NCBI GenBank assembly: GCA_026770705.1
Contig: JANJGN010000029.1
Location: forward strand, 17,298,118 to 17,362,000
Length of the DNA stretch: 63,883 nucleotides
From: Isurus oxyrinchus
Lineage: Eukaryota
Reading direction: 5' to 3'
In this document: positions 4,854-63,770 of the stretch, piece after piece
Layout: each line of letters begins with the position of its first letter
How positions within the stretch are numbered: the first letter of the stretch is position 1
Translations under genes and position numbers: made by a program
The notes under the pieces: generated by a model
Seen by the model: only the letters and a program-made list of their open reading frames with translations
What the model was told of the DNA's origin: nothing
The model's database searches: none

Positions 4854-5122
4854 AAACTATAACTACAGTACACTGACACATGAATAACAATGGGTCAGGC
4901 AATAAACTGCAGGTATCATCAATGCTCCCCGTTTTGATTCCGTCACCAATGACATGGAAAGACCATTTAATGTAATATCATTTGTAATTTAATAGGTTCA
5001 AAAAATGAAGGGCTACGTTAGAAAGTTGAGGTACATCTATACATTGGAAATGGGTGTAAAAACACACAGCAAGTTTACCTTTCTACTGGTCCTGAATAAG
5101 TAACTGAAGTAATAACAATTGT

Positions 5123-9274: not shown

Positions 9275-10024
9275 GTATTCACTGCTCCCAATGCAGTCTA
9301 CTGTATGTTGGGGAGACTAAACAAAGACTGAGTGACCACTTTGCTGAATACCTTTGCTCAGTCCACAAGCATGACCCAGACCTCCTTGTCGCTTGCCATT
9401 TCAACTCACCATCTTGCTCCCATACCCACAGCCCATCCTTGGCCTGCTGCAATGTTCTAGTGAAGCCCAAAGCAAACTGGAGAAACAGCAACTCATCTTC
9501 CAATTAAGCATTTTACAGCCTTCCAGGCTTAACATTGAGTTCAACATATTCAGACCATGAACTTTATCCTCCATCTTTACCCCCTTTTTAATCCAGTTTC
9601 ATTTTTTAATTCTTTCCCCCAACCTCCACATGGCCATCTGTCACTTGTTCTTATGTTTTGCTTTTGCAGAGTGCAACCTTGTTCTGACCCTTGTTCTGCT
9701 ATGAACATATTCTGCTTTCTTATCTTTAAGCCACTATCAACACCGCCTTTAGTCTTTAACACTCTCTTTGCCTGTGCCCATGACATCTTTGTCAAATTTC
9801 TCCTGAGCTCCCACCTATCCTTGACCTTCTATTTTGCTCCACCCCCTCTGAAACAGTATAACATCTATCACATTTCTACCTCTCTTTAGCTCTGAAGAGT
9901 CGTACAGGCTTGAAATGTTAACTGTTTCTCTTTCCACAGATGCTGCCACACTTGCTGAGTTTTTCCAGCATTTTCAGTTTTTATTTCAGATCTCCAACAT
10001 CCACAGTATTTTGCTTTTATCTTA
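9275..10024 (+). mobile_element. 5'-truncated Penelope-like element (GIY-YIG end plus 3' tail)
   Basis: CIHCSQCSLLYVGETKQRLSDHFAE remnant; same tail as other copies; imperfect TSD AGGGTTCACGCT / GGGGTTCACACT. Confidence 0.85.
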
Positions 10025-10799
10025 GGGGTTCACACTCGTTGTATGATGTTATCTAAACCTGAATGGATTTAATATCTTGTAATCACCTTCTGCTACCCAA
10101 CAGTCTGAATCTTCTATCCAAAACTCAGCACTCCAACAATGGCCTTTGCTGTAAATACTTTACAACATCAAAATCACTGGAGCTAGTCTATTCATTTCAA
10201 CTGAAAAATACAGCTAATAAAAAGCAAGAAAACTTCAAAGGAAATAAACCTACAAACAAATCATTGTAGATTATCTGCAGGAATACTATAAACGTAATCT
10301 CATTCCCATTTCTCTTTCTGTAAAGAAAATAAATAAAATTTTGCTTCCTGCACAACAGCCGGAATAACTGCACCACCTCACACAAAAAAGCTTAAATATT
10401 TCTGTCTATTGTAAATAGCTCAGTGTCACATATCAAGCCAGCTTCTTTGTTTCTTCCGCGTATCAAATAGAGATCACGCAACCAGTTAGTCTGATGGCTG
10501 AATGTGTGTGAGTAGGCTAATCTTGATCATGAAGGCTAACAATCATCATCCAAGGGCAAGGGAGGATTTAAATCAACCAGGATCCCAGCTCCTGGTAACT
10601 CATCAGTGACTCCATGTGTGGCTGGGGGACAGAATGGCTCTGGGCTACAATTCTCCGAACAGGTGAACATGTGACACAAGATTAACATAATGAAAATGGA
10701 AGCTTTCCTCAGGGTTACCAGTAGGTGGGACTGTACTCTGGTCGCCCAAGAAAGCCAGCAAATTGGGAAAAAGGGAAGGGGGGATAATTGGGAAAAAGG

Positions 10800-11210
10800 A
10801 GAGAAAAAGATATGCATTTACCTTTCACAACCTCAGGGTGTCCCAAAGTGTTTTCCAGCCAATTAAGTACTTTTGTAGCATAGTCACTATTGCAATGTTA
10901 GGATCATGAGAGCCAATTTGCACACAACAGGGTCCCAAAAACAACAGTCTGATAATGACCAGAAAGTCTGTGGTTTCTGTGATGTTGATCGAGGGACAAA
11001 GTTTGACCAGGACCCTGGGGGATAACTCCCTTGCTCTTCTTTCAACATAGTGCGCGGTGGGATCTTTTGTAGCCACCTTACAGGGTAGAAAGGTTTAACG
11101 TCATTTGAAAGACGACAACTCCGACAACGCAGCACTCTCAGGACAGCACGGTGTGTGGATCTTTTTTTTTGTCCCCAAGGCTCTGGATTGGGATTTGAAC
11201 TTTGTGAGTT
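10800..11210 (-). mobile_element. Deu-domain tRNA SINE
   Basis: Homologous to 4335-4853. Confidence 0.7.
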
Positions 11211-11520
11211 AAGTTTTTTTTTGGGGGGGGGGGATGGTGGTGAGGAGAGGCAGAGCACAGAAAATTTGGGAAGAAAGGGAGAACCAAATTCGATCAAACG
11301 AGCGTCCTATAAACTGACGGGCTCAATGATTACTGGTCTGGTGCAGAACCTATTCTGGTTTTTAAGTATGACTGGGAACAGAGTCCAGTGATGGCCAGTT
11401 TCTCCCTCCATGGGTCACCAGTCACACACTTTGCTGCCGCTTCACCTTCAACACGTTTCCTCCCGCACCAGCGGCGGGGGCGCTGAAAACCGGCCTGATT
11501 TTCACAACAGGACCACGCCG

Positions 11521-12362
11521 GAGGAGGGAGGGAGGGAGAGAGAGAAGGGGGGGGTGGTATGGAAGGGGGGGGTGGGGGGGGTGTGGGGAGTGGGGGAGGG
11601 GGGTGGTGAGGGGAGGGGTGGTGAGGGGAGGGGGGGGGGATGAGGGGATGGGGGGATGAGGGGACGGGGGGGATGAGGGGACGGGGGGATGAGGGGAGGC
11701 GGGGTGGGGAGGGGAGGGGGGATGGGGGGAATATGGGGGGAGGGAGGATATGGGGGGATGAGGGGGTGAGGGGGGAGGGGGTGGGGGGGATGAGGGGGAG
11801 GGGGGTGGGGGGGATGAGGGGGGAGGGATGAGTGGGGGGAGAGGAGAGTGGGGGGAGAGGAGAGTGGGGGGAGAGGAGAGTGGGGGGAGAGTGGGGGGAG
11901 AGGAGAGTGGGGGGAGAGGGGGGGAGAGGGGGGAGAGTGGGGGGAGAGTGGGGGAGGGGGGGCATGGGGGAAGGGGAGGGGGGCGTGGGGGAAGGGGAGG
12001 GGGACGTGGGGGAAGGGGAGGGGGACGTGGGGGAAGGGGAGGGGAAGGGGGGGGCGTGGGGGAAGGGGAAGGGGAGGGGGGGCGTGGGGGAAGGGGAGGG
12101 GGGAGGGGGAAGGGGGGCGTGGGGGAAGGGGAAGGGGGGGAAGGGGGAAGGGGGCGTGGGGGAAGGGGAAGGGGGCGTGGGGGAAGGGGAAGGGGGCGTG
12201 GGGGAAGGGGAAGGGGGCGTGGGGGAAGGGGAAGGGGGCGTGGGGGAAGGGGAGGGGAAGGGGGGGCGTGGGGGAAGGGGAGGGGAAGGGGGGGCGTGGG
12301 GGAAGGGGAGGGGAAGGGGGGGCGTGGGGGAAGGGGAGGGGAAGGGGGGGCGTGGGGGGAGG
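11521..12362 (+). repeat. Compound G-rich low-complexity tandem array with G-quadruplex potential, in DOCK intron 1
   Basis: Consecutive sub-arrays of GGGGGATGAGGGG-, GGGGAGAGGAGAGTG- and GGGGGCGTGGGGGAAGGGGAA-type units. Confidence 0.9.
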
Positions 12363-12792
12363 TGGAAACGGGGATGGCGGAAAATGAAACGAACCTAAAC
12401 ACAGGGACGGGAGCGAGAGGGGAGGCTGGTCCGCTGCGAGAGAAAGAAACGGGAAAGACGTTTCTCCCCGATGCTGGCTCCTGCCTCAGGTAAAGGAAGG
12501 CGGCTTGACACCTGCGCCGGCCCCGCCCGGGCGCAACTCCCGCACACAGGTCAAAGCCCGGCCCGCCCCGCCCCCCCCCCCCCCCCCCCCCCCCCATTGT
12601 TTTCGGCTCCTGAGGTAAATTTTGGGCTTTCTGCGACTGACTTAAATTAGAACTCCCGACTTTCGGGCGTCTCTTTCCTTTCCCTCCCCCCTCCCCCCCC
12701 CCCCCCCCGGGATAACCTCCTCAAAAGGGGCAAATAAAAAAGTTACCGCCGGCGAATAAAAAGTTGCCTCAGAACGGTTCGCGCGAACTCAC

Positions 12793-12839
12793 CGGTTAAT
12801 TTTCTGAGCGAAAGCGCGGCGCTCCGTTGAAGTGGCCAT
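12793..12839 (-). CDS. DOCK6: Coding exon 1 of a DOCK-C subfamily (DOCK6/7/8) Rac/Cdc42 GEF, most like DOCK6
   Basis: ATG at 12839 gives MATSTERRAFAQKIN-R, then a phase-2 donor CG|GTGAGT. This matches the conserved N-termini MAASERRAFAHKINR (DOCK6), MAERRAFAQKISR (DOCK7) and MATLPSAERRAFALKINR (DOCK8). Family call is strong; paralogue call is weaker. Exon 2 (TVAAEVRKQ-like) was not found in 1-12790. Confidence 0.75.
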
Positions 12840-12894
12840 CGTCTCGCCGACAGGAACCCCCCCCCACACACCCCGCCCCCGAGCGGCGGACTCA

Positions 12895-13135
12895 GCCCTC
12901 TCAGCGCTTCGGCAATCTCCGGAGCTACTCGGCAGCGGCGGGCAGGAGGTGTGGGGCTCGGCTACCTCCGGCAGCCCGGAGGCACCGGGCTCAGACTCGG
13001 CCATCTTCGCAGCCCGTGGACTCGGCGATCTCCGGCCGCCTGGGGTCTCGGGCTCGGCAATCTCCGGCCGCCTGGGTGCTCGGGCTCGGCAATCTCCGGC
13101 CGCCTGGGGACACGGGCTCGGTCATCTCCGGCAAC
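12895..13135. repeat. GC-rich ~32-bp minisatellite upstream of the DOCK start codon
   Basis: Repeated unit similar to CTCGGCAATCTCCGGCCGCCTGGGGTCTCGGG; 3-4 clear copies at 13021-13132 and degenerate copies further left. Confidence 0.8.
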
Positions 13136-15167
13136 CGCACCCCCCACTTCCTTCAAAGAAGTTTAGAATAAATCTCCAATGAAACAGCATTTGGTAGAAA
13201 TACGCAGCAAGGTCCGCGTAAAGGGTGGAAAAATACAAGTTAACCTTTAGAGTGCAGACCCTCAATCAGGACATTTACTTATATTTTTTACGACTGAATT
13301 CTCTGTAATGAGAGAGAACTTTGCAAAAAGTTTACAGGCTCGATTATCTGACTTTGTCAAGAATTACATAGAATATGTTTTTTTTTCCATTTTCTGCTGA
13401 AACGTCATCAGGCATACCTAAAAATTAGGTGTCAACTTGGTGAAGCTACAACGCAGGACAACTTGCTTGTCAAACAGCGGAAACAGCATGCAATAGTCAG
13501 AGCTAAGCCATTCACAATCAACCGTTCAGATCTAAGCTCCGCACTTCTGCTACATCCAGTCCTGAATAGTGGTGGACAATTAAACAACTCACTGGAGGAG
13601 GGGGCTCCACAAATATCCCCACCCTCAATGATGAGGGAGCCCAGCACAGCAGTACAAAAGACAAGGTTGAATCATTTGCAGCCATCTTCAGCCAGAAGTG
13701 CCTAGTGGATGATCCATCTTGGCCTCCTGCTGAGGTCCCCAGCACCACAGATACCTGTCTTCAACCAGTTTGATTCACTCCATGTGTTATCAAGAAACAG
13801 TTGAAGGCACTGGATACTGCAAAGGCTATGGGCCCTGACAACATTCAAGCAATAGTACCGAAGACTTGTGCTCCAGAACTGGCCACACACTTAGTCAAGC
13901 TGTTCCAGTATAGCTACAACACTAGCTTCTACCTGGCAATGTGAAAAATTATGCAGGTATGTCCTTTCTACAAAAAGCAGGACAAATCTAACCTGACTAA
14001 TTATCGCCCCATCAGCCTAATCTCGATCATGAGAAAAATTGATGGAAAGTGTTGTCAACAGTGCTATCAAGCAGCACTTACTCAGCAAAAACCTGCTCAC
14101 TGATGCTCAGCTTGGGTTCTGCCAAGGCCACTCAGCTACTAACCACATTACAACCTTGGTCCAAACATGGACAAAAAAGCTGAACTCAAGTGGTGATGTG
14201 AGAGTGACTGCCCTGGATATCCAGTCAGCATTTGACCAAATATGGCATCAAGGAGACCTAGCAAAACTGAATTCAATGAGAATCAGAGGAAAACTCTCCA
14301 CTGATTGGCATCATGCCTAGCTCAAAGGAAGATGGTTGTTGTTGTTGGAGATCAGTCATCTCAGTCCCGGGACATCACTGCAGGAGTTCCTCAGGGTAAT
14401 GTCCTAGGCCCAAACATTGTTTCATCAATGACCTTCCTTCCATCATAAGGTCAATAGTGGGGATGTTCACTGATGATTGCGCAATGCATCATTCACAACT
14501 CCTCAGATACTGAAGCAGTCCATGTCCAAATACAGCAAGACCTGCCCATACTGATAAGTGACAAGTAACATTCATGCCACAGAAGTGCCAAACAACAAAG
14601 GTCTTCAACAACAGAGATTTTAACTATCTCCCATTGACACACAATGGCATTAACATCTCTGAATCCGCCACTATCAACATCCTGGGGGTTATCGTTGACC
14701 ATAAACTGAATTTGGACCAGTTTAAACTAGAATGGCAGGGGGATGGGAACCTGAGCAGGGAACAGAGGAGCGGGAAACAAGGATAGAAACGAAAGAAAAG
14801 TAAGAAACAAAACTGGAAGGCAGAAAAAAACAAGAGCGTAAAACAAATGAGGACATAGTGCAAAATAAAGCTAAGATGACTATTGGGGTTAAAAAGACAA
14901 GTCTAAAGGCTTTGTATCTTAATGCGCAGAGCATTCGCAATACGGTAGATGAATTAACAGCACAAATAGATATAAACAGCTATGACATAGTTGCAATGAC
15001 AGAGATATGGCTGCAGGGTGACCAAGGATGGGAACTGAACATCTAGGGGTATTCAATATTTAGGAAGGACAGACAAATAGGGAAAGGAGATGGGGTAGCA
15101 CTGTTAGTAAAGGATCAATGCATTAGTGAGGAAAGATATTGGCTCAGAAAATCATGATGTGGAATCT

Positions 15168-45595: not shown

Positions 45596-46069
45596 TGTTC
45601 GAGGCTGGGGCACCAGAGCAGATGGAGTTTATCCTGCATCGAACAAGTACTACACATCAACCCTGGTTGATGTTAATGCAGGAAGGAGATTGGGGCAGAC
45701 TGAAATTATTCAATCACTGAGCACGACCATCCCTCCCTTGGATGTGCAAAAAGTAAAAATAGGAACAATAGTAGACCATTGAGCCCCTCGAGCCTGTTCC
45801 ACAATTCATTTCGATCATGGGTGATATTTAACTCCATTTACTCACCTTTGCTTTCTCTGCCTTAACCAATAAAAATATTTCAATCTCGGTCCTGAAAGCA
45901 TCAATTGTCCCCCTACATCCACAGCCTTTTGGGGTGGGGGAAGAGAGTTCCAGATGTTCACCACTCTGTGTCGGAAAAAGCACTTCCCGTTATAATATTA
46001 ATGTAACAAATTACGGAGTTGTCTCAATGCAGCAGGAAGTAATCAGCTGGCTTGCTTCTTCATTTCCAG

Positions 46070-46417
46070 GTTCCACCGTTTTCCTCGCAGCCCCCTCAAA
46101 AGTTCTGCACCTTCCGCGTTCGGGGGTTCCTGGAGGAATATTTGCCCAGCAAGCTGCAAGGCATCAGTTACAGCCCTGCCCTCGCTAGCCGACTCGCAAA
46201 AGAGATGAGCGATGAAATTAAGGAGTTTTCGAAGGGGACTCTGCCGCCCAGATACAAGCTGGTGTGCATTGTGACCCTGGGCGAGAAGAACAATGAGAAT
46301 GTTCTGCTGACCAGCCGTGCTCTCTGGGACTGCTACGCAGACACCTTTGTTTCGCACTGTTATGAGAGCGCTGCCATGTTCGGTGTGGCCAGCATCTTTG
46401 CCTTGTACTGCGAATGA
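46070..46417 (+). CDS. Terminal exon encoding a complete Tctex-1 (dynein light chain, TCTEX1D/DYNLT-type) domain
   Basis: Acceptor TTCTTCATTTCCAG, phase 0. Translation has Tctex1 hallmarks: Y...LAKEMSDEIK, PRYKLVCIVTLGE, SRALWD..D, FGVASIFALYCE-stop. Confidence 0.92.
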   Translation, partial: VPPFSSQPPQKFCTFRVRGFLEEYLPSKLQGISYSPALASRLAKEMSDEIKEFSKGTLPPRYKLVCIVTLGEKNNENVLLTSRALWDCYADTFVSHCYESAAMFGVASIFALYCE

Positions 46418-50012: not shown

Positions 50013-50820
50013 TGGCTGCTAAGAATGTTAAGTAATAATTGTCAGTGGGAGGGAAGGGCTGGTATCATGATCAATGGGAAGGGACTGTCGCTGAAATGAG
50101 GAAGCAGTCCAGTGAAGACAGCATGTCTGTGCCTCAAACCTAGAATAGAAGGAGAATTCATTGACAAGATCTATCTAAAAATTCCAGCTCAGTGAGATGA
50201 TGGCAAAGGGCAGCAAAAGGACAGGAGCCTATTTGGGAACAAACAGCTAAAGAGTCGGATTACAAGTATATTTAATCAGTTCTGACATCGCTGACAAATA
50301 CAGTATGATTTATTGTACAATTGTGGAAGATGCAAATAGATGATTGGAGAAAAAGCTTAATTTCATTTTGCTAATTGTTACTATTTTTCTCTCCTACTTT
50401 CCCTGAACAGGGTCAGGACAGCAACAGGTAGACAGGAGAGCTACTTCTAGCTACCCCTCAGTGCTGATCTGAACTGACAAGCCACCCACACCGTCTCCCT
50501 AATTGGTCCCTGAGGCCACCCAGCACTTAGGGACCGAGATTGGGAACTCAGTGGAAGGAGGGTCGAGAGTCCGTCCAGCCATTGGCAGCTTTGAGTCTTG
50601 CTGCTCCAGTGCGTTGTGGCCAATGGATGAATTCCATCCACTGAGGGTGAATGCACAGCAGTAAGGCACATCTGTGATCATCACGCAAGCTCTGCAGTAA
50701 GGCAGTAGAAAAGATTGTGGTCCCCTTTACCATCCACTGGCTGAACCCTGGCAGAGACCGTCAGGTCAGAGTGTGAGTAGAGTCAGGGAAGTTTCACTAT
50801 TCAATTGATAAGCTGGGCTA

Positions 50821-51470
50821 ATTTCCACACTGAGCAGTCACTATCCACTGAACCATCAGGGGAGCCTGTAGAAATTACCAACTACACTTATACATTCTTA
50901 AGCAGTTAGTGAAATGCTTAACTGATTTATTTACTGTAAATTGCGGCATATAAGTCAACTGGTGTTTAAGACGACACCAACTTTTCTAGCCCTAAAAATC
51001 ATGTTTCTGCAAGCACTTGGTGTATAAGTCGACACCACCAACTCCCCACAACCTTCTCCGCTATGACTATTTACACTCGCATTAATAGTCAGCCTCAATT
51101 TTCAATGTTGAACCTTCCGCTTAATCCTCTGTGGCGATCTGCAAAAGAATTTAAACAGAAGAGAGTTCAGAATGAATGTGACACTTGGCTTTCATCCAAA
51201 AAGATAAAATGAAACAAAAGTCTTGGCTATGACCATCTCTCTGGGTCCCAGTGGACCTTCCTGGACCAATATATCCATCATCTGTCCCAACCCCACATGC
51301 ACCTCCTTCCTGCTTAATCAGGAATTCCACCCTTCCCTTTATAACCTGTATTCACATTCCCTGTATACGATGGGCTCCAAGTATCAATTTCGCTCACTTT
51401 TAGCTTCAAGCACCACTGATCATTTTTCATTCCTGGTTCCACAAACACCACCCCCACCACCTCCTCGTAC

Positions 51471-53921: not shown

Positions 53922-53993
53922 CTTGGTCTTGGCTGGTGCTGAATTAAAGCCTTTCAAATTTTGTAAAGTGTTTGCATAAATGGCTTCATTCAT
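53922..53993 (-). CDS. IgSF receptor: cytoplasmic exon 3 (MNEAIYANTLQNLKGFNSAPAKTK)
   Basis: Acceptor TTTTTATTTCTTCTTAAG, donor AAG|GTAAGC, 72 nt, phase 0/0; YxN motif. The terminal exon is unresolved. Confidence 0.72.
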
Positions 53994-54519
53994 CTTAAGA
54001 AGAAATAAAAAGCAGAGGTCAATGAGATGATCTTGTCCAGAGAAGAGCTGATACAGTGTCTTACAGTTCCCGTCAGTCTCTAGCCCAGGACCCAAGGTCA
54101 CATGGAAGATAAAAGGGTTCCCCCAGCTAGCTAAGATCCTACCAAAATATACTGCACACAATCCAACTCCCCCTCGCCAACTAATCATCGTTCATACATC
54201 CATCTCCAAAAACTGTGCCCAATCCAACCCATCGCACTGAATACCATTCAGAACCAACACACCCACACTTCATACATCGTGCACTTTCCATCCAACCCCA
54301 ACCAGAAGAAAGCACCCAATTATACCCTGTTAAATACCATACCCACCCCAATGTCCTTGTACTTCCTGAACATGTTCTCTCCCTACAGCTGAGCTGCTCT
54401 AGCCGCTGAAGTTGTCTCAAATGGCTCAGAGATAGGAATAACCTGGACCCACACTCAGGCACCCACCAGCATTACTGCCCCATGCCTGCGCCTATCAGTT
54501 TAAGTCCACTGCTAGTTAC

Positions 54520-54594
54520 CTTTTGGATGCTGGGCTCCTCAGTATCAGCTTTTTCCAGAGTCTCATAAACATCAGCATTCGGATGTGAGGACAC
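54520..54594 (-). CDS. IgSF receptor: cytoplasmic exon 2 (VSSHPNADVYETLEKADTEEPSIQK)
   Basis: Acceptor TCTTTCTCCCTTTAAG, donor AAG|GTAACT, 75 nt, phase 0/0; YETL motif. Confidence 0.75.
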
Positions 54595-55217
54595 CTTAAA
54601 GGGAGAAAGACATAATCATTTGGAAACATGGGTCTTGTCATAGTTACACAAGATTGAAGTGTTTCCACTTCTCTCCTTGTCCTGTCCACTTCAAAACTCG
54701 CACCACTTCCTGTTCAGTGGCAGGGAGGCCTATAGGTAATGGGCTTAATCCCATGGTGTTGGAGAGGGTGGTCCCGGTCAAGAACAGACCCAAGACTCAG
54801 CTTCCATCCAAAACCTGGAAGGAAACGTGTACCATGTCAATGACCTCAGGGTCACGGGGGTGGAAGGTCATCCCTAATAGCAACAACGGAAACACTCACT
54901 GTTACTGGGAGCAGGACCAGACTCGGCCCCCACCTCAATCCACTGGGTTAACTGCACCAGGGATGTACAGATCAAAAATATTCACAGACTCTGTTCCCAG
55001 TCTGTACCTCCTCAGCTGATCATAGTCCTAATGGCAGTAGGAGACTCGAGAATTCTGGGTTAAGTTGGGGAAAAACAAAACTAGAGAAAAAAAATCAGCA
55101 CTGAATCACAATCAAGTGACTCTTTTCCAGACACTGTGCAGACATTGACTGATTCCAATTTCACATTCGACTGTGATGACCACCAGCACCCCCTCCGCAC
55201 CCCCCCTCCTCCAACCA

Positions 55218-56426
55218 CAACTTGCATTTATATAGCACCTTTAACTTGGTGAAACATCCTAAGGTGTGTCACAGAAACGTTAACAAACTAAATTTGACCA
55301 TGAACCACGTAAGTAGATATTAGAGGTGGTTAAAAGCTTAGTTAAAGAGATGGATTTAAAAGAGGACCTTAGAGGAGGAGAGAGGTTTAGAGAGAAAATC
55401 CCAGAACTTGGGGCCCAGGCAGCTAAAGACATGGCCACCACTGGTGAAGCAGTTAAAACTGAGGATACAAAAGAGGGGGAACACAGAGTTCTTAGAGGGT
55501 TGTGGGGCTGCAGGAGCTTACAGAGATAGAGAGGGGATTAAGGCTGTGGAGGAGTTTGAAAACAAGAATGAGAATTTTAAAATTAGAGTATTGCCAGACT
55601 AAGGCCAAGCAACCTGTTAACACTCACTGTCTTGGTTATCACATGAAACATAGCCACTTGGTTAATGTACCAGGGTGACCAGGCAACTGCGCCTCAGCAA
55701 CAGTCGATGGGTTTGGGAGGGACAGGGAGAAAACAGAGAGTAAAACCCAGTAAAGCCACATCTACACCAGCTGTGTGTGACCACAGTAGAACCAAAGCAA
55801 CAACAGCTTATAATTGTAATGCACCTTTAGAGTAATGAAATGACCCAAGGCACTTCAATTGAGTGTTAAAGAATAAAGTTGGACACTGAGATTCATAGGG
55901 AGATATTTTGCCAGGTGACCAAATTTTGGTCAAAGAAGTAGATTTTTAAGTTATGGCTTAAAGGAGGAAAGTAATGTAGAGAGGCAGAGAGGTGGAGGGA
56001 GGGAAACCCAGAGCCTTGGGCTGAGGCAACTGAAGACATGGCCACCAATGGCAGAGCAATTACAACTGGGAATACACAAGAGGCCGGAATTAGAGAAGGC
56101 AGATATCTCGGAGGTTATGGGGCTGGAGGAGAGTACAGAGCTAGGGAGACACAAAACTATGGGGGATTTGAAAACAAAAATGAGAATTTTAAAATCAAGA
56201 CATTGGTTGGCCGGGAGTCAGCGAGCACAGGGGTGATAAGGGAACAGGACTTGCAGCAATTTAAGACACGGGCAGTAGAGTTTTGGATGACCTCAAGTGT
56301 AAATGGAGGCTAGAATATGGGAGACTAGCCAAGGGTATGTTGGAATAAAAACAAAGGCATGGATGACATTTTTCAGCAGCAAATGAGCTAAGACAGGGGT
56401 GAAATCAGGCGATGGTATAGAGGCGG
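55218..56426 (-). mobile_element. Two old L2 3' fragments
   Basis: L2 tail CTTGCATTTATATAGCACCTTTA and shared 3' UTR. Confidence 0.65.
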
Positions 56427-57459
56427 TGTGATGAGAGATATATTTTTTAAATATGTGTGTGTGTGTGTATAATTCATTAAACGGAGGGTGGGAAGTTACT
56501 ACAGACAGCTTGTCTGTGAAGGCTAAGAGTTGAAAGGTTAAAGGTGTTAGGTTGATGCATTTGTAATGAGAGGTTATGGTGAGATTGAGTTACAAGTAGA
56601 TAGGGTGGATTTAAAATTTGCACTGAGAGATAAGTGGAGAAACTTGGTTTCTCAGCTGTTGAATTTCAGAAGGGTTTTCAGAGGTGGCAAGGAACACTTG
56701 CATCTTACAAAGGCTTCCTGAGTATACAGGGGATGGTATATTACATTTTATTGACAGGAAAGTAGAGACAAAATAGAAAACGTGAAAGATTTTTAAATGT
56801 GGAGAAGTTGAGTTCAAAGAGGTATTTGAGGACAATGGAGCCTGAGATGAAAGAGAAAAAAGATATTTAAGGAAGGATGCTTAATTGAGCCATGCGATGG
56901 CTATGGGAGAAACACGCTGAAGACCAGCTCCTTGGTGTGTGAGCCATTGAAAAAGCTGTGAAAGTTTTAAATTGGAGGCAGCAACTCTGTGTTAAGCCAG
57001 GAAAGTCTGTGTTTTTGGAAACAGTTTGTTTCTGAACCTCTTTTGGAATTCCACATCAGAGCAGAAGTGTTTGAGACGTTGTGAGGCATACTTTTAATAA
57101 TGTGACAACAATTCCTTGATTTGGGTAATATTACTGGATTTTTATGGTTAAAATCTACAAGAGGATTGTTGCCAAGAAGGTAGTTTAATTGTGCACTTTT
57201 GATCAAGCGGGTTTTTTTATGGGTTGTTCTGTATGACTGTTTAACTATGGAAGGTTAATCTTGTGTGTTTAAGTCTTTTTTCTTTTTAATTAAATCTTTT
57301 AATTTTTAAAATTTTAAAGGTGTTATTGGAGTTCTATGCTTTTGAGGTCAGTAGCTTTTCCTCCTCGTTTTCACAATAAAAAGAGGTTTATGATCAGTGA
57401 GACAGACTTCACTCTGGCATCTGGCTTGCTCAACAATAACCTCAGCTGTGATCATAACA
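56427..57459. mobile_element. Solo LTR inserted in L2
   Basis: TGTGATGA...TCATAACA termini; flanks GCGG/GTGG; L2 sequence resumes afterwards. Confidence 0.6.
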
Positions 57460-57751
57460 GTGGATATGGGTGGTCTTACAGATGGCATGACTAAGAGGTT
57501 GGAAGTTCACCTTGGGGTCGAATGTGACACCAAGGTTGCAAACAGACTGGCTTCATCTCAGAATATTGCCAGCAAAAGGATGGAGTCTGAAAAGCAAGGA
57601 GAATGGATTCAGTGCATAGGTCTTTACTGTGTTGGTCCCAGGTTTGTAGCACAGGGACTCAAAGGGGCTATTGACAGAAAGTCTTTGATTGGAACCAATG
57701 TCTAGAAATCCCAGGTGAGTATTGTGTTCCTTTGTTCACATTCATACTCAC

Positions 57752-57805
57752 CATGTACAGCGGATCTTCAACCTGTTGCCCTGTAGCTCTATGCTTTCTT
57801 ATGAG
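57752..57805 (-). CDS. IgSF receptor: cytoplasmic exon 1 (LIRKHRATGQQVEDPLYM)
   Basis: Acceptor CCCTCTTTTTCAG, donor ATG|GTGAGT, 54 nt, phase 0/0; basic stop-transfer RKHR. Confidence 0.82.
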
Positions 57806-58159
57806 CTGAAAAAGAGGGACAATTGTGATTGACAGATCTGGCTGACTGTCGCCTCACTGTAAACAAAAGCGTCAAAGGTTGGAGACACTCAGAAGGTCAG
57901 GTCTTTAGAGCCACAGACATCAGCCAGTCAAGGTTTCAGATCTTTGAGCAAGAGTTTGAGGACCTCAAGCATCAAGCAACTGATTCTGTTTCTGCACAGA
58001 TGCAGCCTGACTTGCTGAGCCTCATTGATTTCCAGCACCTCCACGAATATTGCTGCACATTTTCTTGTGGGACTTCCCAAGAAAAAGGTGAAGTCACTTC
58101 AGAAGCAGGTTGACACCAGACACTGAGCAAGTTGAGCTCCAAAGTCGAAAGGTACTTAC

Positions 58160-58251
58160 AGCGTACACAACAACTGACGTCACAATGATCAGGAGAAGCA
58201 CTACACTGGTGCTGATCCCAGAGACCAGCCACTCTTGTTTTTCAGCCACAT
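58160..58251 (-). CDS. IgSF receptor: transmembrane exon (DVAEKQEWLVSGISTSVVLLLIIVTSVVVYA)
   Basis: Acceptor TTTGTGTTGCAG (phase 1), donor GCT|GTAAGT (phase 0); uncharged hydrophobic helix. Confidence 0.85.
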
Positions 58252-58353
58252 CTGCAACACAAACAGGAGTTCAGGAGGAGCTTCTTAGAGAGTGGTTAGG
58301 ATGTGGATCTTGCTACCACAGGGAATAGCTGAGCTGGATAGCATAGACACATT

Positions 58354-58470
58354 GGGCAGAACTTTACGACAGCGGGATTTTACGTTCCCCATGGCGGCGA
58401 TGGGATTTATAATGGCTCACCACATTTTACAGCCCAGTCCCCACCGAAACGGGACCATAAAATTCTGCCC
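58354..58470. mobile_element. 117-bp Harbinger-like mini-MITE inside a CR1 remnant
   Basis: TIRs GGGCAGAACTTTACG / CATAAAATTCTGCCC; TSD ATT. Confidence 0.75.
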
Positions 58471-58644
58471 ATTTAAGGGGAAGCGGGATAATCACATGAG
58501 GAAGAAGGAAATAAGAGGATATGTTGATGGGATGAGATGAAATAAAATGGGAAGAGGCTCATGTGAAGTATAAATGCTAGCATAGACCAGCTGGGCCGAA
58601 TGGCCTGTTTCTGTGCTGCACATTCTGCCATTCTACCCTGTCGA

Positions 58645-59065
58645 CAAAGGCTCAGTTTCACCTCTGAGTCACAAGATATGAGTTCAAGACTCACTCCAGG
58701 GACTTGAGCACAAAAAAACTAAGTGGACACCACAGTGCTATACCGAGGGAACACTGCACTGTTGGAGATGTCGTCAGTTTGAACAAAATGTTAAAACGAG
58801 GCTCTGTTTGCCCTCTCAGGGGGACACAAAATATCTCCCAGCAATGTTTTGAACAAAAACTGGGGATTTTTCCCCAATGTCCTCGCAAATATTTATCCCT
58901 CAGTCAACTCGACAAAAACAGATTATCTGGGTCATTATCACATTGTTGTTTGTGGGAGCTTGCTGTGTGCAGATTGGCTACCACATCTCCACTTTACGAC
59001 ATATTTCATTGACTGTAAGGTGCTTTGGGGAGTGAAAGGTGCTATATGAATGCAACTCTTTCTAC
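58645..59065 (+). mobile_element. Deu-domain tRNA SINE
   Basis: tRNA-like head, Deu core, L2-like tail. Confidence 0.75.
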
Positions 59066-60152
59066 CTTTTCTATCCTAAGTATTACAAATTATTTACAGG
59101 TGTTTATACTCCACACAAGTCTCCTCCCACCTCCCTTCATCGAACTGTATTAGCATGCAGCTACACTTTACAGATTTACCAACTCACTTCTTTAACCAGT
59201 TTGTTCCTCCTGAAAACACTGATAAGACCTGAATTCCATTGGTTACTAGACAGCCTCCATTACCTCTCAAGCAAGAGCCTTGACAGCAAGGGTAAATAGG
59301 GTATTTAACCAGCGAGGGGAACATTAGCTGGGCCTAATTCTGCCCTCAGTCACTATCCAGACTTCCCTGCAGAGCCTGAGAGATGGATGAACCTGAGGGC
59401 TGGGAACCCAGAGATTCTGTCATCCCCGCTGGCAATTCAGAAAACAGGAGGTAGTCATTCAGCCCATCTTGCCTGTGCCACCTCTTTAAAATAACTATTC
59501 AACCAATCCCACTGGCCTGCTCTTTCATAACAGCCCCAAAAACTTCATTTCCTGCACTTCCTTTTTGAATTTTCCTCCATCACCCTTTCAGGCAGCGCAT
59601 TGCAGATCACCCTAACTTGCTGCATAGAAAGAATTCTCCTCATCTCCCCCACTCTTGCTCTTTGCAAATAATCTTTAATCTGTGTCCTCTAGTTACTGAA
59701 ACTATTGTCAGTTTTCACCTTATTTACTCTATTAAGACCCATTCACAATTTGTACAACTCCATGCAATCTCACCTTAACCGTAAGCGTATGTTTGCTCAC
59801 ATGTTGGGTTTGACTTTGGGATTGTTGGCTTTCCATTGTTGGACTATCTACCATTGCTGACCATGATAACTGGTTTAGGGCTGAGATACTAGAGAGTGTC
59901 CAGCTCACGTGAGAACTGTTATCCATCAAATAAATCTACGCTTTTGGGAGGAAAAAATTCAAAAGGAAAATTAATGGAAAAAATAAAACTGCGTCCAATT
60001 CTGAGTGTTGGGGAAAGTGCAGGAGAGGAAGCTAATTGGTAGCTTTTTCAGTGAGGCAGTGCAGTCACCTTGGGCCAAATGGCCTCTCTCTGAGCTGTAG
60101 GATTCTACGATAAACGCAGAATGTCTTCGGTATGAAGCTAATAGATACAAAC

Positions 60153-60431
60153 CACTTGTCATGCTGTCAGTCACATTGACCACCACCACTGACGTTCTTG
60201 TTCCCAACGTATTCTCTGCAGAGCAGGTGTAGTTCCCCTGGTCACTGAGTGAGATGTTCTCCACTTTGATCTTCAGTTGATTTGTTTGCTTGGTCTGCAA
60301 AACTGTTCCATTGAAGCTCCAAGACATTCGGGCTATCGGGTTGCTATCGGATATACAAAGAAGTTCGAGCAGGTCACCTTTCCTCTTCAGAACATCTTTC
60401 CCTGGTTGCACCTTGAGACTTACAGGTCCAT
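60153..60431 (-). CDS. IgSF receptor: C2/I-set domain exon
   Basis: Acceptor CTTTTCTAACAG; splicing creates a YGP linker; LELLCISDSNPIARMSW...DQGNYTCSAEN; donor G|GTTTGT at phase 1 (donor position less certain). Confidence 0.85.
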
Positions 60432-61289
60432 CTGTTAGAAAAGAGCATTGCAAAATCACCAGACAAAGATCATATTAAAGCCCCACCTCTAGAATAAACT
60501 TTACTGAAAACAGTGGATATAAGTAACACACTCCTGTCTCATGACAGAATTGTTCCTCAGCATGTTCACAAGCCAAACAGACCAGAAGGACATTGCTGTC
60601 TGATGTCTACTCAATGTCGAGTTGGGCAACCCCAGCTAGGGCAGCACGAAGAGCTGGAACTGGCCTCAGTGCTCCTTAGCTAGGAAAAGGAAAAAAATCA
60701 GCCAAAGTTCCTGGTCATCATTCAGCAATCCCTGCTTCCAAAGTAGAAAGCATTTGGCTATGTTTTGGATAGCCTACTAATGCTCACCATCTTTGTTCAC
60801 AGGTAAATACCAGCCACTCGGGGAAGGTCACAGATCAACAAAGAAGGAGGCCATTCAGTCCATGTTGGCTATTTGGCAGAGCAATCTAATTGGTGTTACT
60901 CCCCCTGTGCCTTTCCCATAGCCCTGCAAATTTAAAAAAATATATATTCATGGGATGTGGGCATTGCTGCCAAGGCCAACATTTATTACCCCATCCTTAT
61001 ATCCCTTGGAAGGTGGCAGCGAGCCGTCTTCTTGAACCATTGCAATCCATGTGGTGTTGGTAAGTCCACAGTGCTATTAGTTTTCAAGTGCATATCCAAT
61101 TCCCTTCTGAAAGTTACGACTGAATCTGCTTCCAACGCCCTTTCAGGCAGCGCATTCCAGATCACAACAATTTGCTGCATGAAAAAGACATTAGAAAATA
61201 CTTGGCACATGTCCAGGGCTGGTCCAGCAAGGAGTCAGCACCAAGCAGGAAGGAGGAAGAATTAGTTATTCTGCCTGTGCAGTACTTAC

Positions 61290-61589
61290 ATGAAACTTGG
61301 AGCTTCAGCACCTTCAGTATCTTCTTAAATTCATGAGTGATCTGGCAAGTAATTGTTTTACCGTCGTCTTTTGCTTGTGGTACAAATGCAATTGTAGACA
61401 TAGCATTGAAGGTTCCATCACATTGAGCATTGACAGATAACAGAGTGTTTCCTTCTAGTTGACTCTTGTCCATCAGCCAATCCACCTGAATGTCTCTTGG
61501 ATAAAACCCAATCATATTCATTTGCAGCATCATGGGCTTGTTCACTTCCATTGGGGACATTTGGAAAAAAGTCTCAGAAATTGGTACAG
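61290..61589 (-). CDS. IgSF receptor: C1-set-like domain exon
   Basis: Acceptor TTTTGTTCTTTAAG, donor T|GTAAGT, 300 nt, phase 1/1. Motifs GFYPRDIQVDW, DGTF, DDGKTITCQITH. Confidence 0.88.
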
Positions 61590-63154
61590 CTTAAAGAACA
61601 AAAGAGAAAAGTATTGAAGTACTTTGTCACAACAGGAGGAATAACAAGAGCAGACTTGTGAAATCACCCAGCTGTCAGTTCATATATTTGGAACTAATTA
61701 GTTACCATGGCTTGTATTTAAGGATATTGATACCTTAAAAAAGTTGAGAATTAATATTTGTTCTTGTGTCAGACCAGTCGTTCTCCTCTCTCATCCTGGT
61801 CCCAAGCTGAAAGCACCAACTCATGCCAGGCGATGGTACAAAGAGTGCAGTTGCCCATCTGCTCACCTCCCCAAATAGCCAGATGAATGCCTTTAGGCAC
61901 TGAGTTGCTACATGTTTTCAACCACAACCATGCCAAGTGTGTCCTTGCAACCAGGGCAACACACAGACAGTCCTGCAGAGGTTGTTGGATAGCAACTGAC
62001 AACAACAACTTACATTTATAAGAAGCGCCTTCAACATCATTAAGTATCCCAAGGTGCTTCACAGGAGTGTTATCAAACAAACTTCAATAGGAGCCACATA
62101 AGCTCGGTCAAAAAAAGAGGTTTTAAGGAGTGCCTTGAAGAAAAAGAGATGTAATATGGTGGAGAGGTTAAGGAAGGGATCTCCAGAGCTTAGGCCCTTG
62201 GCAGCTGAAGGCAGAGCCACAAACAGTGCAGCATGGAACCACAAGAGGCCAGAATTGGAGGAGCACCGAGGTTATAGGGAAGGAGGGGATTACAGAGATG
62301 GGGAGGGGTAACCAGGAGTCATCTGCCATTTCCTCCTCCCAGTCAGGGATCCCAAGGCCCAATTTTACCAACTGTCAGCAGCCAACTCAGTACAGGCTAG
62401 AGATCAAATCCAAGACTTTCCTAATCTCTGTCAGCTGGCTACTTTGTAAATTTGCTGAGCCATGCTCATTCTTCGTCTTTCACACATTGTTCCCCAGGGT
62501 GAAAGGGCAGTAGGTTGATTCCCTGCTCATATACTTTTTCAAAAATCACACAATAGACAATCTCAACAGTAGGGCCGCTTTTCAAATGACAACAAAGCAT
62601 TCCCAATTCTGGAATGTTGAACACATCATTCAGCGAGCAGCTGAGAAATGCAGGTGAAGAAAGTGTTGGGGTTTATACCTGGCCTGTTCCTGGTTAGTGC
62701 ATCTTAGCCAGGGGGTCTTAGTAGTCAGCCTGACCACTCTGGGTCTGGAAGGTGCAAATAAGACAAACTCCCCAGCCATTACTGCCTTTAGGTGGGGCCT
62801 GCTAGAAAGGTGTGTGTGGACTTTGAACCCAATCCATGTTCCGCCCAATGCCAAACAGGTCTTCTCAAGATCATGAGTCTCTTCAAGGGCTCCGTACAGC
62901 AACAGATGGTCAATTTCCTTACTGAATGATTGGGTGGGAGACTCAGGGGGTTTGCACTAGTGCATTAAGCAGTTAACCAAAAGCCCAATTCCAGGTATCA
63001 TTGGACATCAGGCATCATTACAGGCTGTCCACCAATATCCAATCATCCAAGGATAAGTTTATTCCTAATGTGGAAGTCCTGCTTTCATCCAAATTGGTAA
63101 CATGATGGCTGTGCACCCACTATGGGGGCCTGATTTCAACAGACCAGCACTCAC

Positions 63155-63565
63155 CTTTGATAATCACCTGTGTCACCTCAGGCACCCCTTTAACTTCAGC
63201 TTTTATCTTGTTAACTGGGTCACAGAAATAGAATCCAGCATCTGACACAAGTAATTCTTTGATGCGGAGTTGGGCAGTGTGAAGGGAAGTAATCAAGCTC
63301 TCGTAACGTGAAGGGAGATGACATTGCTTTATGAAATCAAGAGTATTCACAATGACATGGGCATTTTTACGGTCTTCAGGATGTTTATAATGCAGCCATT
63401 TCACAAACTGTCGCTCAGCTACCATTCTTTTGGAGAAATTTGTGATCACTTTGGGTTCCAAAGTCGGCCTTTGGATGGAGTCTGCAAACTTGCAAGTGAT
63501 TATCAAATCTTCCTTTATTACACCATAGGCTTTCTTTATAAGTTGTGCATTGCTGCTACTTTTCC
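63155..63565 (-). CDS. IgSF receptor: V-set domain exon
   Basis: Acceptor TTGTTTTCCAG, donor G|GTGAGT, 411 nt, phase 1/1. Motifs LIITC...VKW...LRIKELLVSDAGFYFC. Leader exon is probably beyond the window end. Confidence 0.88.
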
Positions 63566-63649
63566 CTGGAAAACAATTTAAAATTAACAAGGGAATGGAA
63601 TAGGTATTTAAAAATAATAAATCACCGCTCACGTCATCTCATTACAAAT

Positions 63650-63770
63650 GGAAAATACTGCGGGATGCTGAAAATCTACAATATTAATAGACAATGCTAG
63701 AAATACTCAGCAGGTCTGGCGTCTGTGGAGAGAGAAACAAAGTTAATGTTTCAGGTCTGTGACATTTCAC
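63650..63770 (-). mobile_element. Old Penelope 3' tail
   Basis: AATACTCAGCAGGTCTGGC..GTGGAGAGAGAAACAAAGTTAATGTTTCAGG matches the other tails. Confidence 0.7.

What the first reader, a model, noticed from the sequence alone, without database searches (positions are those of the whole stretch)
53922..63565. Unrecognised single-chain V-C1-C2 Ig-superfamily receptor with a tyrosine-rich tail
Seen: seven phase-compatible exons give V, C1-like (GFYP, DGTF), C2 (CxSDSNP..SW.FNGT), an uncharged TM helix and a tail with three Tyr motifs (DPLYM, DVYETL, AIYANT). The four short exons are not evident from the ORF track. Established: C1-set domains are mostly found in antigen receptors, MHC, tapasin, B7, SIRP and nectin-type proteins; this C2 signature resembles CEACAM/CD22-type domains. 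I cannot assign it to a named gene. Inference: a lineage-specific immune or adhesion receptor, relevant to early adaptive-immunity evolution.
Basis: partly seen in the sequence, partly recalled or inferred. Interest (0 to 1): 0.8.

Follow-up and report, generated by a model that had tools for sequence, protein, structure and literature searches.

The report
Shark V-C1-C2 immunoglobulin-family receptor gene
This is a real, expressed shark gene for a membrane protein with three antibody-like domains and a tyrosine-bearing tail; it was found only in sharks, public gene sets list it under conflicting automatic names, and its partner and job are unknown.

Summary
All seven exons exist on the minus strand with the stated motifs. 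Assembled RNA contigs from 4 runs (2 studies, 2 shark species) join V, C1, C2, TM and the first tail exon at canonical splice sites. The gene is larger than described. Its leader exon lies beyond the window end. A last 5-codon exon plus 3'UTR starts at 51138.

Domain 2 is a true C1-set domain (Pfam 8.7e-12) and is closest to SIRP-like C1 domains. It lacks the canonical B-strand cysteine in the window and in all 7 orthologues. Domain 3 is a CEACAM/Siglec/contactin-type C2. The V domain has no significant relative.

Orthologues were found only in sharks (4 orders, one gene per species). NCBI names them CADM3-like, CADM1-like or Siglec-12/8. Nothing outside the family scores above 66 bits.

It fails the tests for nectin/CADM, Siglec, SIRP, ITAM and ITIM membership. 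The tail keeps three tyrosine motifs, including YxxL and YxN.

Against great white shark, 27 of 30 ectodomain and TM nucleotide differences change an amino acid.

Best reading: a shark-restricted, fast-evolving signalling receptor. It is a new member of a known kind and of moderate interest. The scan had noted parts of this same stretch before.

The parts
63155..63565 (-). V-set exon (136 full codons, phase 1/1). The canonical Cys..W..DAGFYFC pattern is present. There are 31 residues between the B-strand Cys and the C-strand Trp, plus an extra Cys (KQCH).
   Evidence: Sequence reading. Pfam V-set E 1.4e-05. RNA contigs cover 63155-63565/6 in 4 of 4 runs, and the joint to 61589 is seen.
61290..61589 (-). 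C1-set exon (99 full codons, phase 1/1). It has GFYP, W, CDGTF and TCQITH. Met stands where the canonical B-strand Cys should be.
   Evidence: Pfam C1-set 8.7e-12. The PDB alignments put Met at the Cys position. Joints on both sides are seen in 4 of 4 runs.
60153..60431 (-). C2/I-set exon (phase 1/1) with four N-x-S/T sequons. The donor is G|gtttgt at 60153.
   Evidence: Pfam Ig_3 1.3e-11 and I-set 3.3e-10. A CEA domain scores 34.1 bits. Joints 61290/60431 and 60153/58251 are seen in 4 of 4 runs.
58160..58251 (-). Stalk and transmembrane exon (..WLVSGISTSVVLLLIIVTSVVVYA). The helix has no charged residue. The exon ends in phase 0.
   Evidence: Sequence reading. Joints 60153/58251 and 58160/57805 are seen in 4 of 4 runs.
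57752..57805 (-). Cytoplasmic exon 5 (LIRKHRATGQQVEDPLYM), carrying the conserved EPxY[MV][VA] motif.
   Evidence: Sequence reading. The joint to the TM exon is seen in 4 of 4 runs. The contig runs 3 letters past 57752, and those letters fit the start of exon 6. Alignment A1 shows the motif conserved.
54520..54594 (-). Cytoplasmic exon 6 (VSSHPNADVYETLEKADTEEPSIQK), carrying the conserved DVY[ED]TL motif.
   Evidence: Sequence reading. It is 25 of 25 residues identical to Carcharodon P0151. They are inferred from the orthologue models.
53922..53993 (-). Cytoplasmic exon 7 (MNEAIYANTLQNLKGFNSAPAKTK), carrying the [IV]Y[AE]N[TV] (YxN) motif. The donor is AAG|gtaagc.
   Evidence: Sequence reading and tblastn.
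50266..51138 (-). Last exon. The acceptor is ttttgcag|, followed by ATC GCC ACA GAG GAT TAA (IATED-stop, 51138..51121) and then 3'UTR. AATAAA lies at 50314-50309 and ATTAAA at 50276-50271. The 3' end near 50266 comes from arithmetic only.
   Evidence: A pattern search gave one hit preceded by AG, and the sequence was read. Carcharodon ends in ..IAIED. Contig X2 record 8 (2185 nt), minus the known exons, leaves 873 nt.

Best explanation
This is an intact, transcribed gene, single-copy as far as seen, with at least 9 exons on the minus strand. It encodes a type I membrane glycoprotein of about 454 aa that was found only in sharks.

The parts in order are:
- a signal peptide, whose exon lies beyond the window;
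- an atypical non-J V domain with a long B-C region;
- a true C1-set domain of SIRP-like type that has lost the canonical B-strand cysteine;
- a glycosylated C2/I-set domain of CEACAM/Siglec type;
- an uncharged transmembrane helix;
- a 72-residue tail with three conserved tyrosine motifs, each on its own phase-0 exon, followed by a fourth, 5-codon tail exon.

Shown: the gene structure, its splicing and expression, the domain types, conservation across four shark orders, and fast ectodomain change.

Inferred: it acts as a ligand-binding cell-surface receptor. Its membrane-distal V/C1 face changes quickly. Its tail, once phosphorylated, would dock SH2 adaptors (YxN for Grb2-type; YxxL for Src/Syk-type or AP-2 sorting). 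It would do so on its own, without a DAP12/FcRgamma-type partner, because the TM has no charge. It would not recruit SHP phosphatases in the classical way, because there is no ITIM.
For: - Splicing: four GT..AG joints are seen in contigs of 4 of 4 runs from 2 studies. Exon-bearing contig depth is 25.8-159.2, against 2-7 for non-repeat intron pieces.
- Domains: Pfam C1-set 8.7e-12, Ig_3 1.3e-11, V-set 1.4e-05.
- C1 relatives: SIRPalpha D3 is the best single-stretch PDB match, at 38.9 bits. The nearest non-family proteins are SIRP-like V-C1-C1 proteins of reptiles, amphibians, lungfish and coelacanth. hhalign gives probability 98.9% over 177 columns.
- Orthologues: intact genes of 408-460 aa exist in Carcharodon, Cetorhinus, two Scyliorhinus species, Heterodontus, Mustelus and Pristiophorus. 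There are 94 invariant columns.
- Tail: EPxY[MV][VA] is in 7 of 7 orthologues by the alignment (6 of 7 by the literal pattern; Carcharodon has NPLYMV). DVY[ED]TL and the YxN motif are each in 6 of 7.
- Fast change: 22 of 24 listed differences to the Carcharodon transcript are non-synonymous. By the protein comparison it is 27 of 30, a ratio of about 2.5.
- Copy number: there are no tandem copies in the window.
Against: - The tissue of expression is unknown, because the runs are coded and their kind is only guessed as RNA.
- No ligand is known.
- The SH2 motif assignments rest on recalled consensus rules, not on a test.
- The dN/dS excess over 1 is not significant (binomial p = 0.08). It is also compatible with relaxed constraint.
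- Whole-protein feature and fold searches put Siglecs and nectins nearest, so descent from one of those families is not excluded.
- Restriction to sharks rests on a word-limited search (only 8000 candidates were scored) and on a list of the 150 best hits.
- Junctions 5/6, 6/7 and 7/8 and the leader exon were not seen in reads.
Confidence: 0.6

Rival explanations
1. It is a divergent offshoot of the Siglec/CD22/MAG lineage. In this view its second domain drifted, or was exchanged, to a C1-set type and it no longer binds sialic acid.
For: - ESM Atlas nearest named clusters are sialoadhesin, CD22, Siglec-10 and MAG (0.96-0.97, 199-208 shared features).
- The Foldseek top hits are MAG Ig1-3 (9.4e-20) and CD22 d1-3 (1.2e-18).
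- The profile aligns across domains 2-3 of MAG and CD22.
- NCBI names 4 of the orthologue records Siglec-12 or Siglec-8.
- A V-domain Cys and a C1-domain Cys co-occur in 6 of 8 sequences and are both absent in 2 of 8 (plus the window). This recalls the Siglec d1-d2 disulfide.
- A YENV-type motif also occurs in CD22 (recalled, not tested).
Against: - The V domain keeps the canonical B-F cysteines and has FYFCD where Siglecs carry the essential Arg (the Siglec rule is recalled).
- A PDB sequence search with the V exon finds no Siglec.
- Domain 2 scores as C1-set, not as a Siglec C2 or Ig_CD22 domain.
- There is no ITIM.
- Foldseek identities are only 16-18%, and nectin, RAGE and SIRP score almost as well.
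Confidence: 0.15
2. It is a nectin/nectin-like (CADM) family adhesion molecule that mediates cell-cell contact through V-domain trans-interaction.
For: - The three-domain order is the same, with a C1-like middle domain. Pfam C2-set_2 (CD80-like) hits domain 2 at 3.8e-06.
- Foldseek gives nectin-1 at 1.2e-18 with TM 0.47 by target length (SIRPalpha reaches 0.49), and Necl-4 at 2.8e-17.
- NCBI names the records CADM3-like or CADM1-like in 4 species.
Against: - The tail ends IATED/IAIED/ITKDS. It has no C-terminal PDZ-binding motif or juxtamembrane FERM-binding motif as I recall them for nectins and CADMs.
- The V exon gives nectin-1 D1 only E = 1.9.
- C1-set outscores C2-set_2 by 18 bits.
- The ectodomain changes at or above the neutral rate, unlike conserved adhesion molecules.
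Confidence: 0.1
3. It is a gene drifting towards loss. It is still transcribed, but its protein is no longer under selection.
For: - 27 of 30 differences to Carcharodon are non-synonymous.
- The canonical C1 disulfide is lost in all sequences, and the V disulfide is lost in Pristiophorus.
- The GFYP glycine is Arg in 4 of 8 sequences.
- Cetorhinus ends 21 residues earlier than Carcharodon.
Against: - Open frames of 408-460 aa are kept in 7 species of 4 orders, with 94 invariant columns and conserved tail motifs.
- All four tested introns are removed precisely in two species, at contig depths of 26-159.
- Exon 6 is 25 of 25 residues identical between the two lamnids.
Confidence: 0.05

Closest known systems
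SIRP family (SIRPalpha/beta/gamma) and SIRP-like V-C1-C1 proteins of reptiles, amphibians and coelacanth
   Same: The C1 domain is closest to these. SIRPalpha D3 is the best single-stretch PDB match (38.9 bits). The nearest non-family proteins show 35-39% identity. hhalign gives 98.9%. Both are single-pass and non-rearranging.
   Different: The third domain is C2/I-set, not C1. The V domain has no J-like G strand and is not alignable beyond its last strands. There is no ITIM and no charged TM residue. The canonical C1 disulfide is lost.
Nectins and nectin-like molecules (CADM1-4, PVR)
   Same: Both have a V, C1-like, C2 ectodomain and a type I membrane topology. The fold matches are good. This is the source of the automatic NCBI names.
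   Different: There is no significant V similarity. The tail has no PDZ or FERM motifs (motif definitions recalled). The ectodomain evolves fast. It was found only in sharks.
Siglecs (CD22, MAG, sialoadhesin)
   Same: These are nearest by language-model features and by Foldseek over the whole ectodomain. The C2 domain is similar. The tail exons each carry one tyrosine motif, including a YxN.
   Different: The V domain lacks the Siglec Arg and the Siglec cysteine pattern. Domain 2 is C1-set. There is no ITIM.
RAGE (AGER)
   Same: RAGE is described as V-C1-C2 plus TM and a short tail. Foldseek E-values are 1e-16 to 2e-15.
   Different: Identity is only 16-18%, with no sequence-level match above generic Ig. 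From recall, the RAGE tail has no tyrosine motifs and RAGE is reported only from mammals.
CEACAM family
   Same: Domain 3 matches CEA A/B domains best at single-domain level (34.1 bits for the exon, 47.7 bits for the profile). The ..SNP.A..SW..NGT pattern is included.
   Different: CEACAMs have a disulfide-less N domain and no C1 domain.

Membership tests
Ig C1-set domain (Pfam PF07654) | Score above the curated gathering threshold | tested here: met
   45.7 bits against a cut-off of 21, E 8.7e-12, for the window exon. The Carcharodon orthologue scores 37.2 bits.
Ig C1-set domain (Pfam PF07654) | Canonical B-strand to F-strand disulfide | tested here: not met
   Met (window) or Leu (7 of 7 orthologues) stands at the B-strand Cys position. 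The F-strand Cys is invariant.
Ig C1-set domain (Pfam PF07654) | C-strand Trp and F-strand C-x-[VI]-x-H signature | tested here: met
   W196, C240, I242 and H244 are invariant in A1.
Nectin / nectin-like (CADM) | V, C1-like, C2 ectodomain | tested here: met
   Pfam V-set, C1-set / C2-set_2 and Ig_3 appear in that order. Foldseek gives nectin-1 at 1.2e-18.
Nectin / nectin-like (CADM) | C-terminal PDZ-binding motif (afadin-binding in nectins; class II PDZ plus FERM-binding in CADMs; definitions recalled) | tested here: not met
   The C-termini are IATED (window), IAIED, ITKDS, GKL/RKL and TTA. There is no such motif.
Nectin / nectin-like (CADM) | V domain recognisably related to nectin V domains | tested here: not met
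   The V exon against PDB gives nectin-1 D1 at E = 1.9 with no stretch passing.
Siglec | Essential Arg on the V-domain F strand and the non-canonical Siglec cysteine pattern (definitions recalled) | tested here: not met
   The F strand reads DAGFYFCD, with a canonical Cys and no Arg. B- and F-strand cysteines are present in the window and in 6 of 7 orthologues.
Siglec | C2-set second domain | tested here: not met
   Domain 2 is C1-set. There is no Ig_CD22 hit at E <= 0.01 on P0151.
SIRP | V-C1-C1 ectodomain | tested here: not met
   Domain 3 gives no C1-set hit at E <= 1. It is Ig_3/I-set.
SIRP | ITIMs in the tail, or a charged TM residue for DAP12 (definitions recalled) | tested here: not met
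   The three tyrosines have P, D and A/G/V at position -2. The TM stretch has no K, R, D or E.
ITAM-bearing receptors | YxxL/I, then 6-8 (up to 12) residues, then YxxL/I (definition recalled) | tested here: not met
   YETL is followed by 17 residues and then YANT (T at +3, L at +4). In other sharks the second motif is YENV.
One-to-one orthologue of a characterised vertebrate gene | Reciprocal best match and shared synteny outside sharks | not testable with these tools
Sequence searches found no candidate.

The most novel reading that the evidence does not exclude
The gene is a surviving, shark-only representative of an old non-rearranging V-C1 receptor lineage, sitting in a DOCK-C/CAMSAP neighbourhood that looks like human 19p13 (an MHC-paralogous region, from recall). 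It joins a SIRP/antigen-receptor-type C1 domain to a Siglec/CEACAM-type C2 domain. It has replaced the canonical C1 disulfide by a V-to-C1 interdomain bridge. Its ligand-binding face is under diversifying selection, as a self/pathogen recognition receptor that signals through Grb2-type docking sites.
Probability: 0.15. Interest if true: 0.65.

Novelty: new member of a known kind. Interest (0 to 1): 0.4.

Why it matters
Sharks are the oldest living lineage with antibodies, T-cell receptors and MHC, and C1-set domains are largely confined to that machinery and a few relatives. This gene is a single-copy, expressed shark receptor. It couples a true C1 domain lacking the canonical disulfide to a Siglec/CEACAM-type domain and a non-ITIM, non-ITAM tyrosine tail. 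That adds one more data point on how Ig-domain exons were shuffled among receptor families.

It also gives a concrete, testable candidate for a fast-evolving shark surface receptor. In addition, it shows that automatic names for it in public shark gene sets (CADM3-like, Siglec-12) are unreliable. It does not by itself open a long-standing question.

Tried and rejected
- The word search with the V exon alone was blank. This says little, because only proteins of 75-238 aa were candidates.
- The PDB search with the V exon gave no significant hit.
- The AlphaFold model of the window's V exon with 7 orthologues as alignment reached only mean pLDDT 51.7. I did not send it to a fold search, because the matches would be meaningless.
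- The full-length Carcharodon model reached pLDDT 62.1 and pTM 0.37. Its Foldseek ranking does not separate MAG, CD22, nectin-1, Necl-4, RAGE and SIRPalpha: all have E between 1e-20 and 1e-15, 14-20% identity and rmsd of 8-15 Å. I therefore used it only as evidence for a three-Ig rod.
- UrIg2 (PDB 9dmx) came up as a C1 match. The paper shows it is a 10-domain protein (passages of PMC12227049), so it was rejected as a relative of this gene.
- ITAM and ITIM readings of the tail were rejected on spacing and on the residue at -2 and +3.
- A search for the teleost cluster name from the Atlas (dkey-238d18) found 2 unrelated papers.
- Paper searches listed no paper describing this gene. These cover only Creative-Commons PMC and bioRxiv.
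- DOCK6 adjacency was checked only through a recalled N-terminal motif. Which DOCK-C paralogue it is was not determined.

Full report
WHAT IS THERE

The ORF list and the minus-strand sequence show three long Ig-domain exons with phase 1 at both ends: V at 63565..63155, C1 at 61589..61290 and C2 at 60431..60153. A 92-nt stalk and transmembrane exon follows (58251..58160, ending in phase 0). Then come three short phase-0 cytoplasmic exons: 57805..57752, 54594..54520 and 53993..53922. Every boundary has AG/GT.

Pfam scores the exons one by one:
- V-set: E 1.4e-05, 25.6 bits against a cut-off of 26.
- C1-set: E 8.7e-12, 45.7 bits against 21. CD80-like C2-set_2 is also hit, at 3.8e-06.
- Domain 3: Ig_3 at 1.3e-11 and I-set at 3.3e-10.

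Whole-protein analyses used the public great-white-shark orthologue as a proxy.

IS IT EXPRESSED AND SPLICED AS READ?

Yes, for the part I could test. One read-laying run on 57700-63650 (5951 letters) placed contigs from four runs. X1, X2 and X3 come from one sample of organism A. X5 comes from organism B in another study.

In all 4 of 4 runs a single contig carries the joints 63155/61589, 61290/60431, 60153/58251 and 58160/57805. Each has CT..AC ends on the + strand, which is GT..AG on the minus strand. The run kind is only a guess ('RNA?'). Precise removal of four introns, and contig depths of 25.8-159.2 on exons against 2-7 on non-repeat intron pieces, nevertheless indicate mRNA. That step is an inference.

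The C2 donor is at 60153 (G|gtttgt), which gives ..DSMTS-D-VAEKQ... The contig runs 3 letters beyond exon 5, and these letters equal the first 3 letters of exon 6.

Organism A contigs differ from the window at 0-1 letters per exon, so A is the source species or very near it. The organism B contig differs at 11, 12, 6 and 1 letters in the V, C1, C2 and TM exons.

THE GENE IS LONGER THAN THE FINDING

The public orthologues start with a 21-residue leader. tblastn of P0151 finds nothing for it in the 318 nt left upstream of the V exon. Contig X2 record 8 has only 29 nt before the V exon. The leader exon therefore lies beyond the window end.

At the other end, Carcharodon continues after ..APAKT with five more residues. 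A pattern search found one match preceded by a polypyrimidine-AG acceptor, at 51138. The sequence there reads ATC GCC ACA GAG GAT TAA. AATAAA lies at 50314-50309 and ATTAAA at 50276-50271.

Contig X2 record 8 is 2185 nt. Subtracting 29 nt and the seven exons leaves 873 nt, which would end the last exon near 50266. That fits, but it is arithmetic, not an observation.

RELATIVES

- The word search with the V exon was blank (it is length-limited).
- The full HMMER scan of 1.84 billion representatives with the C1 exon gave 523 proteins at E <= 0.001 and 15 at E <= 1e-30. Only two of the 150 listed match as a single stretch at high identity. These are P0003 (433 aa, 81%) and P0014 (143 aa, 61%). 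The rest are multi-C1 proteins whose scores add up over many domains.
- P0003 is NCBI 'cell adhesion molecule 3-like isoform X2' of Cetorhinus maximus.
- Searching with P0003 gave 7 proteins at E <= 0.001 among 3099 candidates.
- Searching with a profile of seven orthologues gave 13 among 8000 scored.
- Together these returned one gene per species in Carcharodon, Cetorhinus, Scyliorhinus canicula, S. torazame, Heterodontus, Mustelus and Pristiophorus. The automatic names are CADM3-like, CADM1-like, Siglec-12 and Siglec-8.
- The next hit after the family (507 bits or more) has 56 bits.
- A local hmmsearch of the family profile over all 174 proteins fetched shows the same gap, from 260.7 to 66.1 bits. 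No protein outside the family carries the tail motifs.
- All 22 amino-acid changes predicted from the organism B contig are the residues of the Carcharodon protein P0151. Organism B is therefore great white shark or something indistinguishable here, and the window comes from a close lamnid relative.
- No ray, chimaera or bony-vertebrate orthologue appeared. These searches are word-limited or list-limited, so absence is not proven.

DOMAIN BY DOMAIN

- V domain. There is no significant PDB match (best E 0.04; nectin-1 D1 at 1.9). It has the canonical Cys, Trp and DAGFYFC. Thirty-one residues lie between the Cys and the Trp. The G strand has no J-like motif.
- C1 domain. The best single-stretch PDB match is SIRPalpha D3 (38.9 bits, E 6.9e-09). 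Ig constant domains, beta-2-microglobulin/MHC and shark UrIg2 follow. The nearest non-family proteins in the big search have 35-39% identity. They are SIRP-like or 'NCR3LG1-like' V-C1-C1 proteins of turtles, lizards and coelacanth. By profile score the nearest are frog, toad and lungfish proteins. hhalign gives 98.9% probability over 177 columns, from the last V strands through C1.
- The canonical B-strand cysteine of C1 is Met in the window and Leu in 7 of 7 orthologues. The F-strand Cys, the Trp and the His are invariant.
- The glycine of GFYP is Arg in 4 of 8 sequences.
- A cysteine in the V domain (KQCH) and one in C1 (CDGTF) are both present in 6 of 8 sequences and both absent in 2 of 8 (Heterodontus and Pristiophorus). 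No sequence has only one of them (plus the window). This suggests an interdomain bridge. It may be a single evolutionary event, and I could not test it.
- Pristiophorus lacks both canonical V cysteines and has two others.
- Domain 3. The best single-domain match is CEA (34.1 bits for the exon; 47.7 bits for the profile). Contactins, MAG, CD22 and FcRL5 follow. All four N-x-S/T sequons of the Carcharodon protein lie in domain 3.

WHOLE ECTODOMAIN

The AlphaFold model of P0151 has pLDDT 62.1. C2 reaches 80-93, C1 52-80, V 32-78 and the tail about 30. Foldseek ranks MAG, nectin-1, CD22, Necl-4, RAGE, SIRPalpha and CD155 within E 1e-20 to 1e-14, at 14-20% identity. Language-model features put Siglec clusters first (0.96-0.97). 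For the V-C1 part they put teleost V plus C2-set_2/Ig_CD22 clusters and C1-set clusters first (0.93-0.94). These results agree on 'three-Ig surface receptor' and do not settle the family.

TAIL

Alignment A1 keeps three motifs:
- E-E-P-x-Y-[MV]-[VA]. The P and Y are invariant, in 7 of 7.
- [AV]-D-V-Y-[ED]-T-L, in 6 of 7. The Mustelus isoform has another end.
- [IV]-Y-[AE]-N-[TV], in 6 of 7.

Pristiophorus has the second motif twice. None of the motifs fits the ITIM rule, because position -2 is P, D or A/G/V. The pair YETL and YANT is 17 residues apart, and the second lacks L/I at +3, so it is not an ITAM. The TM has no charged residue.

From recalled consensus rules, YxN is the Grb2-SH2 type, and YxxL fits Src/Syk-type SH2 domains or AP-2 sorting. 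This is inference.

RATE OF CHANGE

Of the 24 differences listed for the Carcharodon contig, 22 are non-synonymous. Counting 27 amino-acid differences against 30 nucleotide differences in V, C1, C2 and TM gives dN 0.032, dS 0.013 and a ratio of about 2.5. The binomial p against neutrality is 0.08. The ectodomain is therefore not under visible purifying selection between two close species, but positive selection is not demonstrated.

Exon 6 is 25 of 25 residues identical. Between shark orders, identity is 37-62% per ectodomain domain. One non-synonymous site (61544, Val/Ala) differs among contigs of the same sample, and the alternative equals the Carcharodon residue.

SURROUNDINGS

- tblastn finds no second copy in the window.
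- A Tctex-1 family ORF lies at 46052-46417 on the + strand, convergent with this gene (Pfam 5.7e-20).
- At about 12.82 kb on the minus strand, inside the GC-rich stretch at 10-14 kb, an ORF reads MATSTERRAFAQKINR. I recognise this from memory as a DOCK-C (DOCK6/7/8) N-terminus. This is a lead only, and the paralogue is not determined.

LITERATURE

I saw passages of PMC12227049. UrIg2 is a 10-domain nurse-shark protein, so it is not this gene. I saw passages of PMC10751288. These say that C1-type IgSF genes and VJ-C1 genes are discussed as building blocks linked to MHC paralogous regions. They make no mention of SIRP, nectin or this locus. For PMC7286890 (nectin family evolution) I saw the listing and the start of the abstract only. 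The searches listed no paper on this gene. They cover only the held library. Supplements were closed and not opened.

VERDICT

This is a real, conserved, apparently shark-restricted IgSF receptor with an unusual C1 domain and a non-ITIM, non-ITAM tyrosine tail. It is already predicted in public gene sets under misleading names. It fails the defining tests of nectin/CADM, Siglec and SIRP while resembling each in one part. I rate it as a new member of a known kind, of moderate interest.

Noticed in passing
window 46052-46417 (+): An uninterrupted 121-aa ORF matches the Pfam Tctex-1 family over the whole profile (E 5.7e-20). It is convergent with the receptor gene, whose 3' end lies about 4 kb away.
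   Followed up: partly
window about 12770-12830 (-), within the GC-rich stretch 10000-14000: An ORF reads MATSTERRAFAQKINR and is then cut by a stop, probably the exon 1 donor region. From memory it looks like the first exon of a DOCK-C (DOCK6/7/8) gene. Beside it, at 11.3-12.6 kb, are long Pro-rich and Gly/Arg-rich low-complexity ORFs on both strands.
   Followed up: partly
window 58894-59092 and 60884-61281 (introns of the receptor gene): Summed contig depth is 820-7500 in all four runs, with dozens of contigs and many loose ends and false 'joints'. These are abundant interspersed repeats transcribed or present elsewhere in the genome. The stretch 63700-63770 upstream of the V exon also looks like a common shark repeat.
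   Followed up: no
window 61544 (C1 exon): A>G (Val to Ala) is seen in the contigs of X1 and X3 but not X2, all three from one sample. The same residue is fixed in the Carcharodon protein. It is either a heterozygous site or a shared polymorphism.
   Followed up: no
P0155/P0156 (Pristiophorus japonicus orthologue): The exon with the DVYDTL motif is present twice in tandem. The V domain lacks both canonical cysteines and has two others. Isoform X2 skips the C1 exon, giving V joined directly to C2.
   Followed up: no
P0003 (Cetorhinus maximus orthologue): The protein ends at ..AIYANTLQN, 21 residues before the Carcharodon end. The last part of the tail therefore seems dispensable.
   Followed up: no
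window 62858-63184 and 61563-61941: Low-depth X1 contigs (6.6 and 7.1) run across the V-exon donor and the C1-exon acceptor without splicing. This is as expected for pre-mRNA or a trace of DNA in the run.
   Followed up: no
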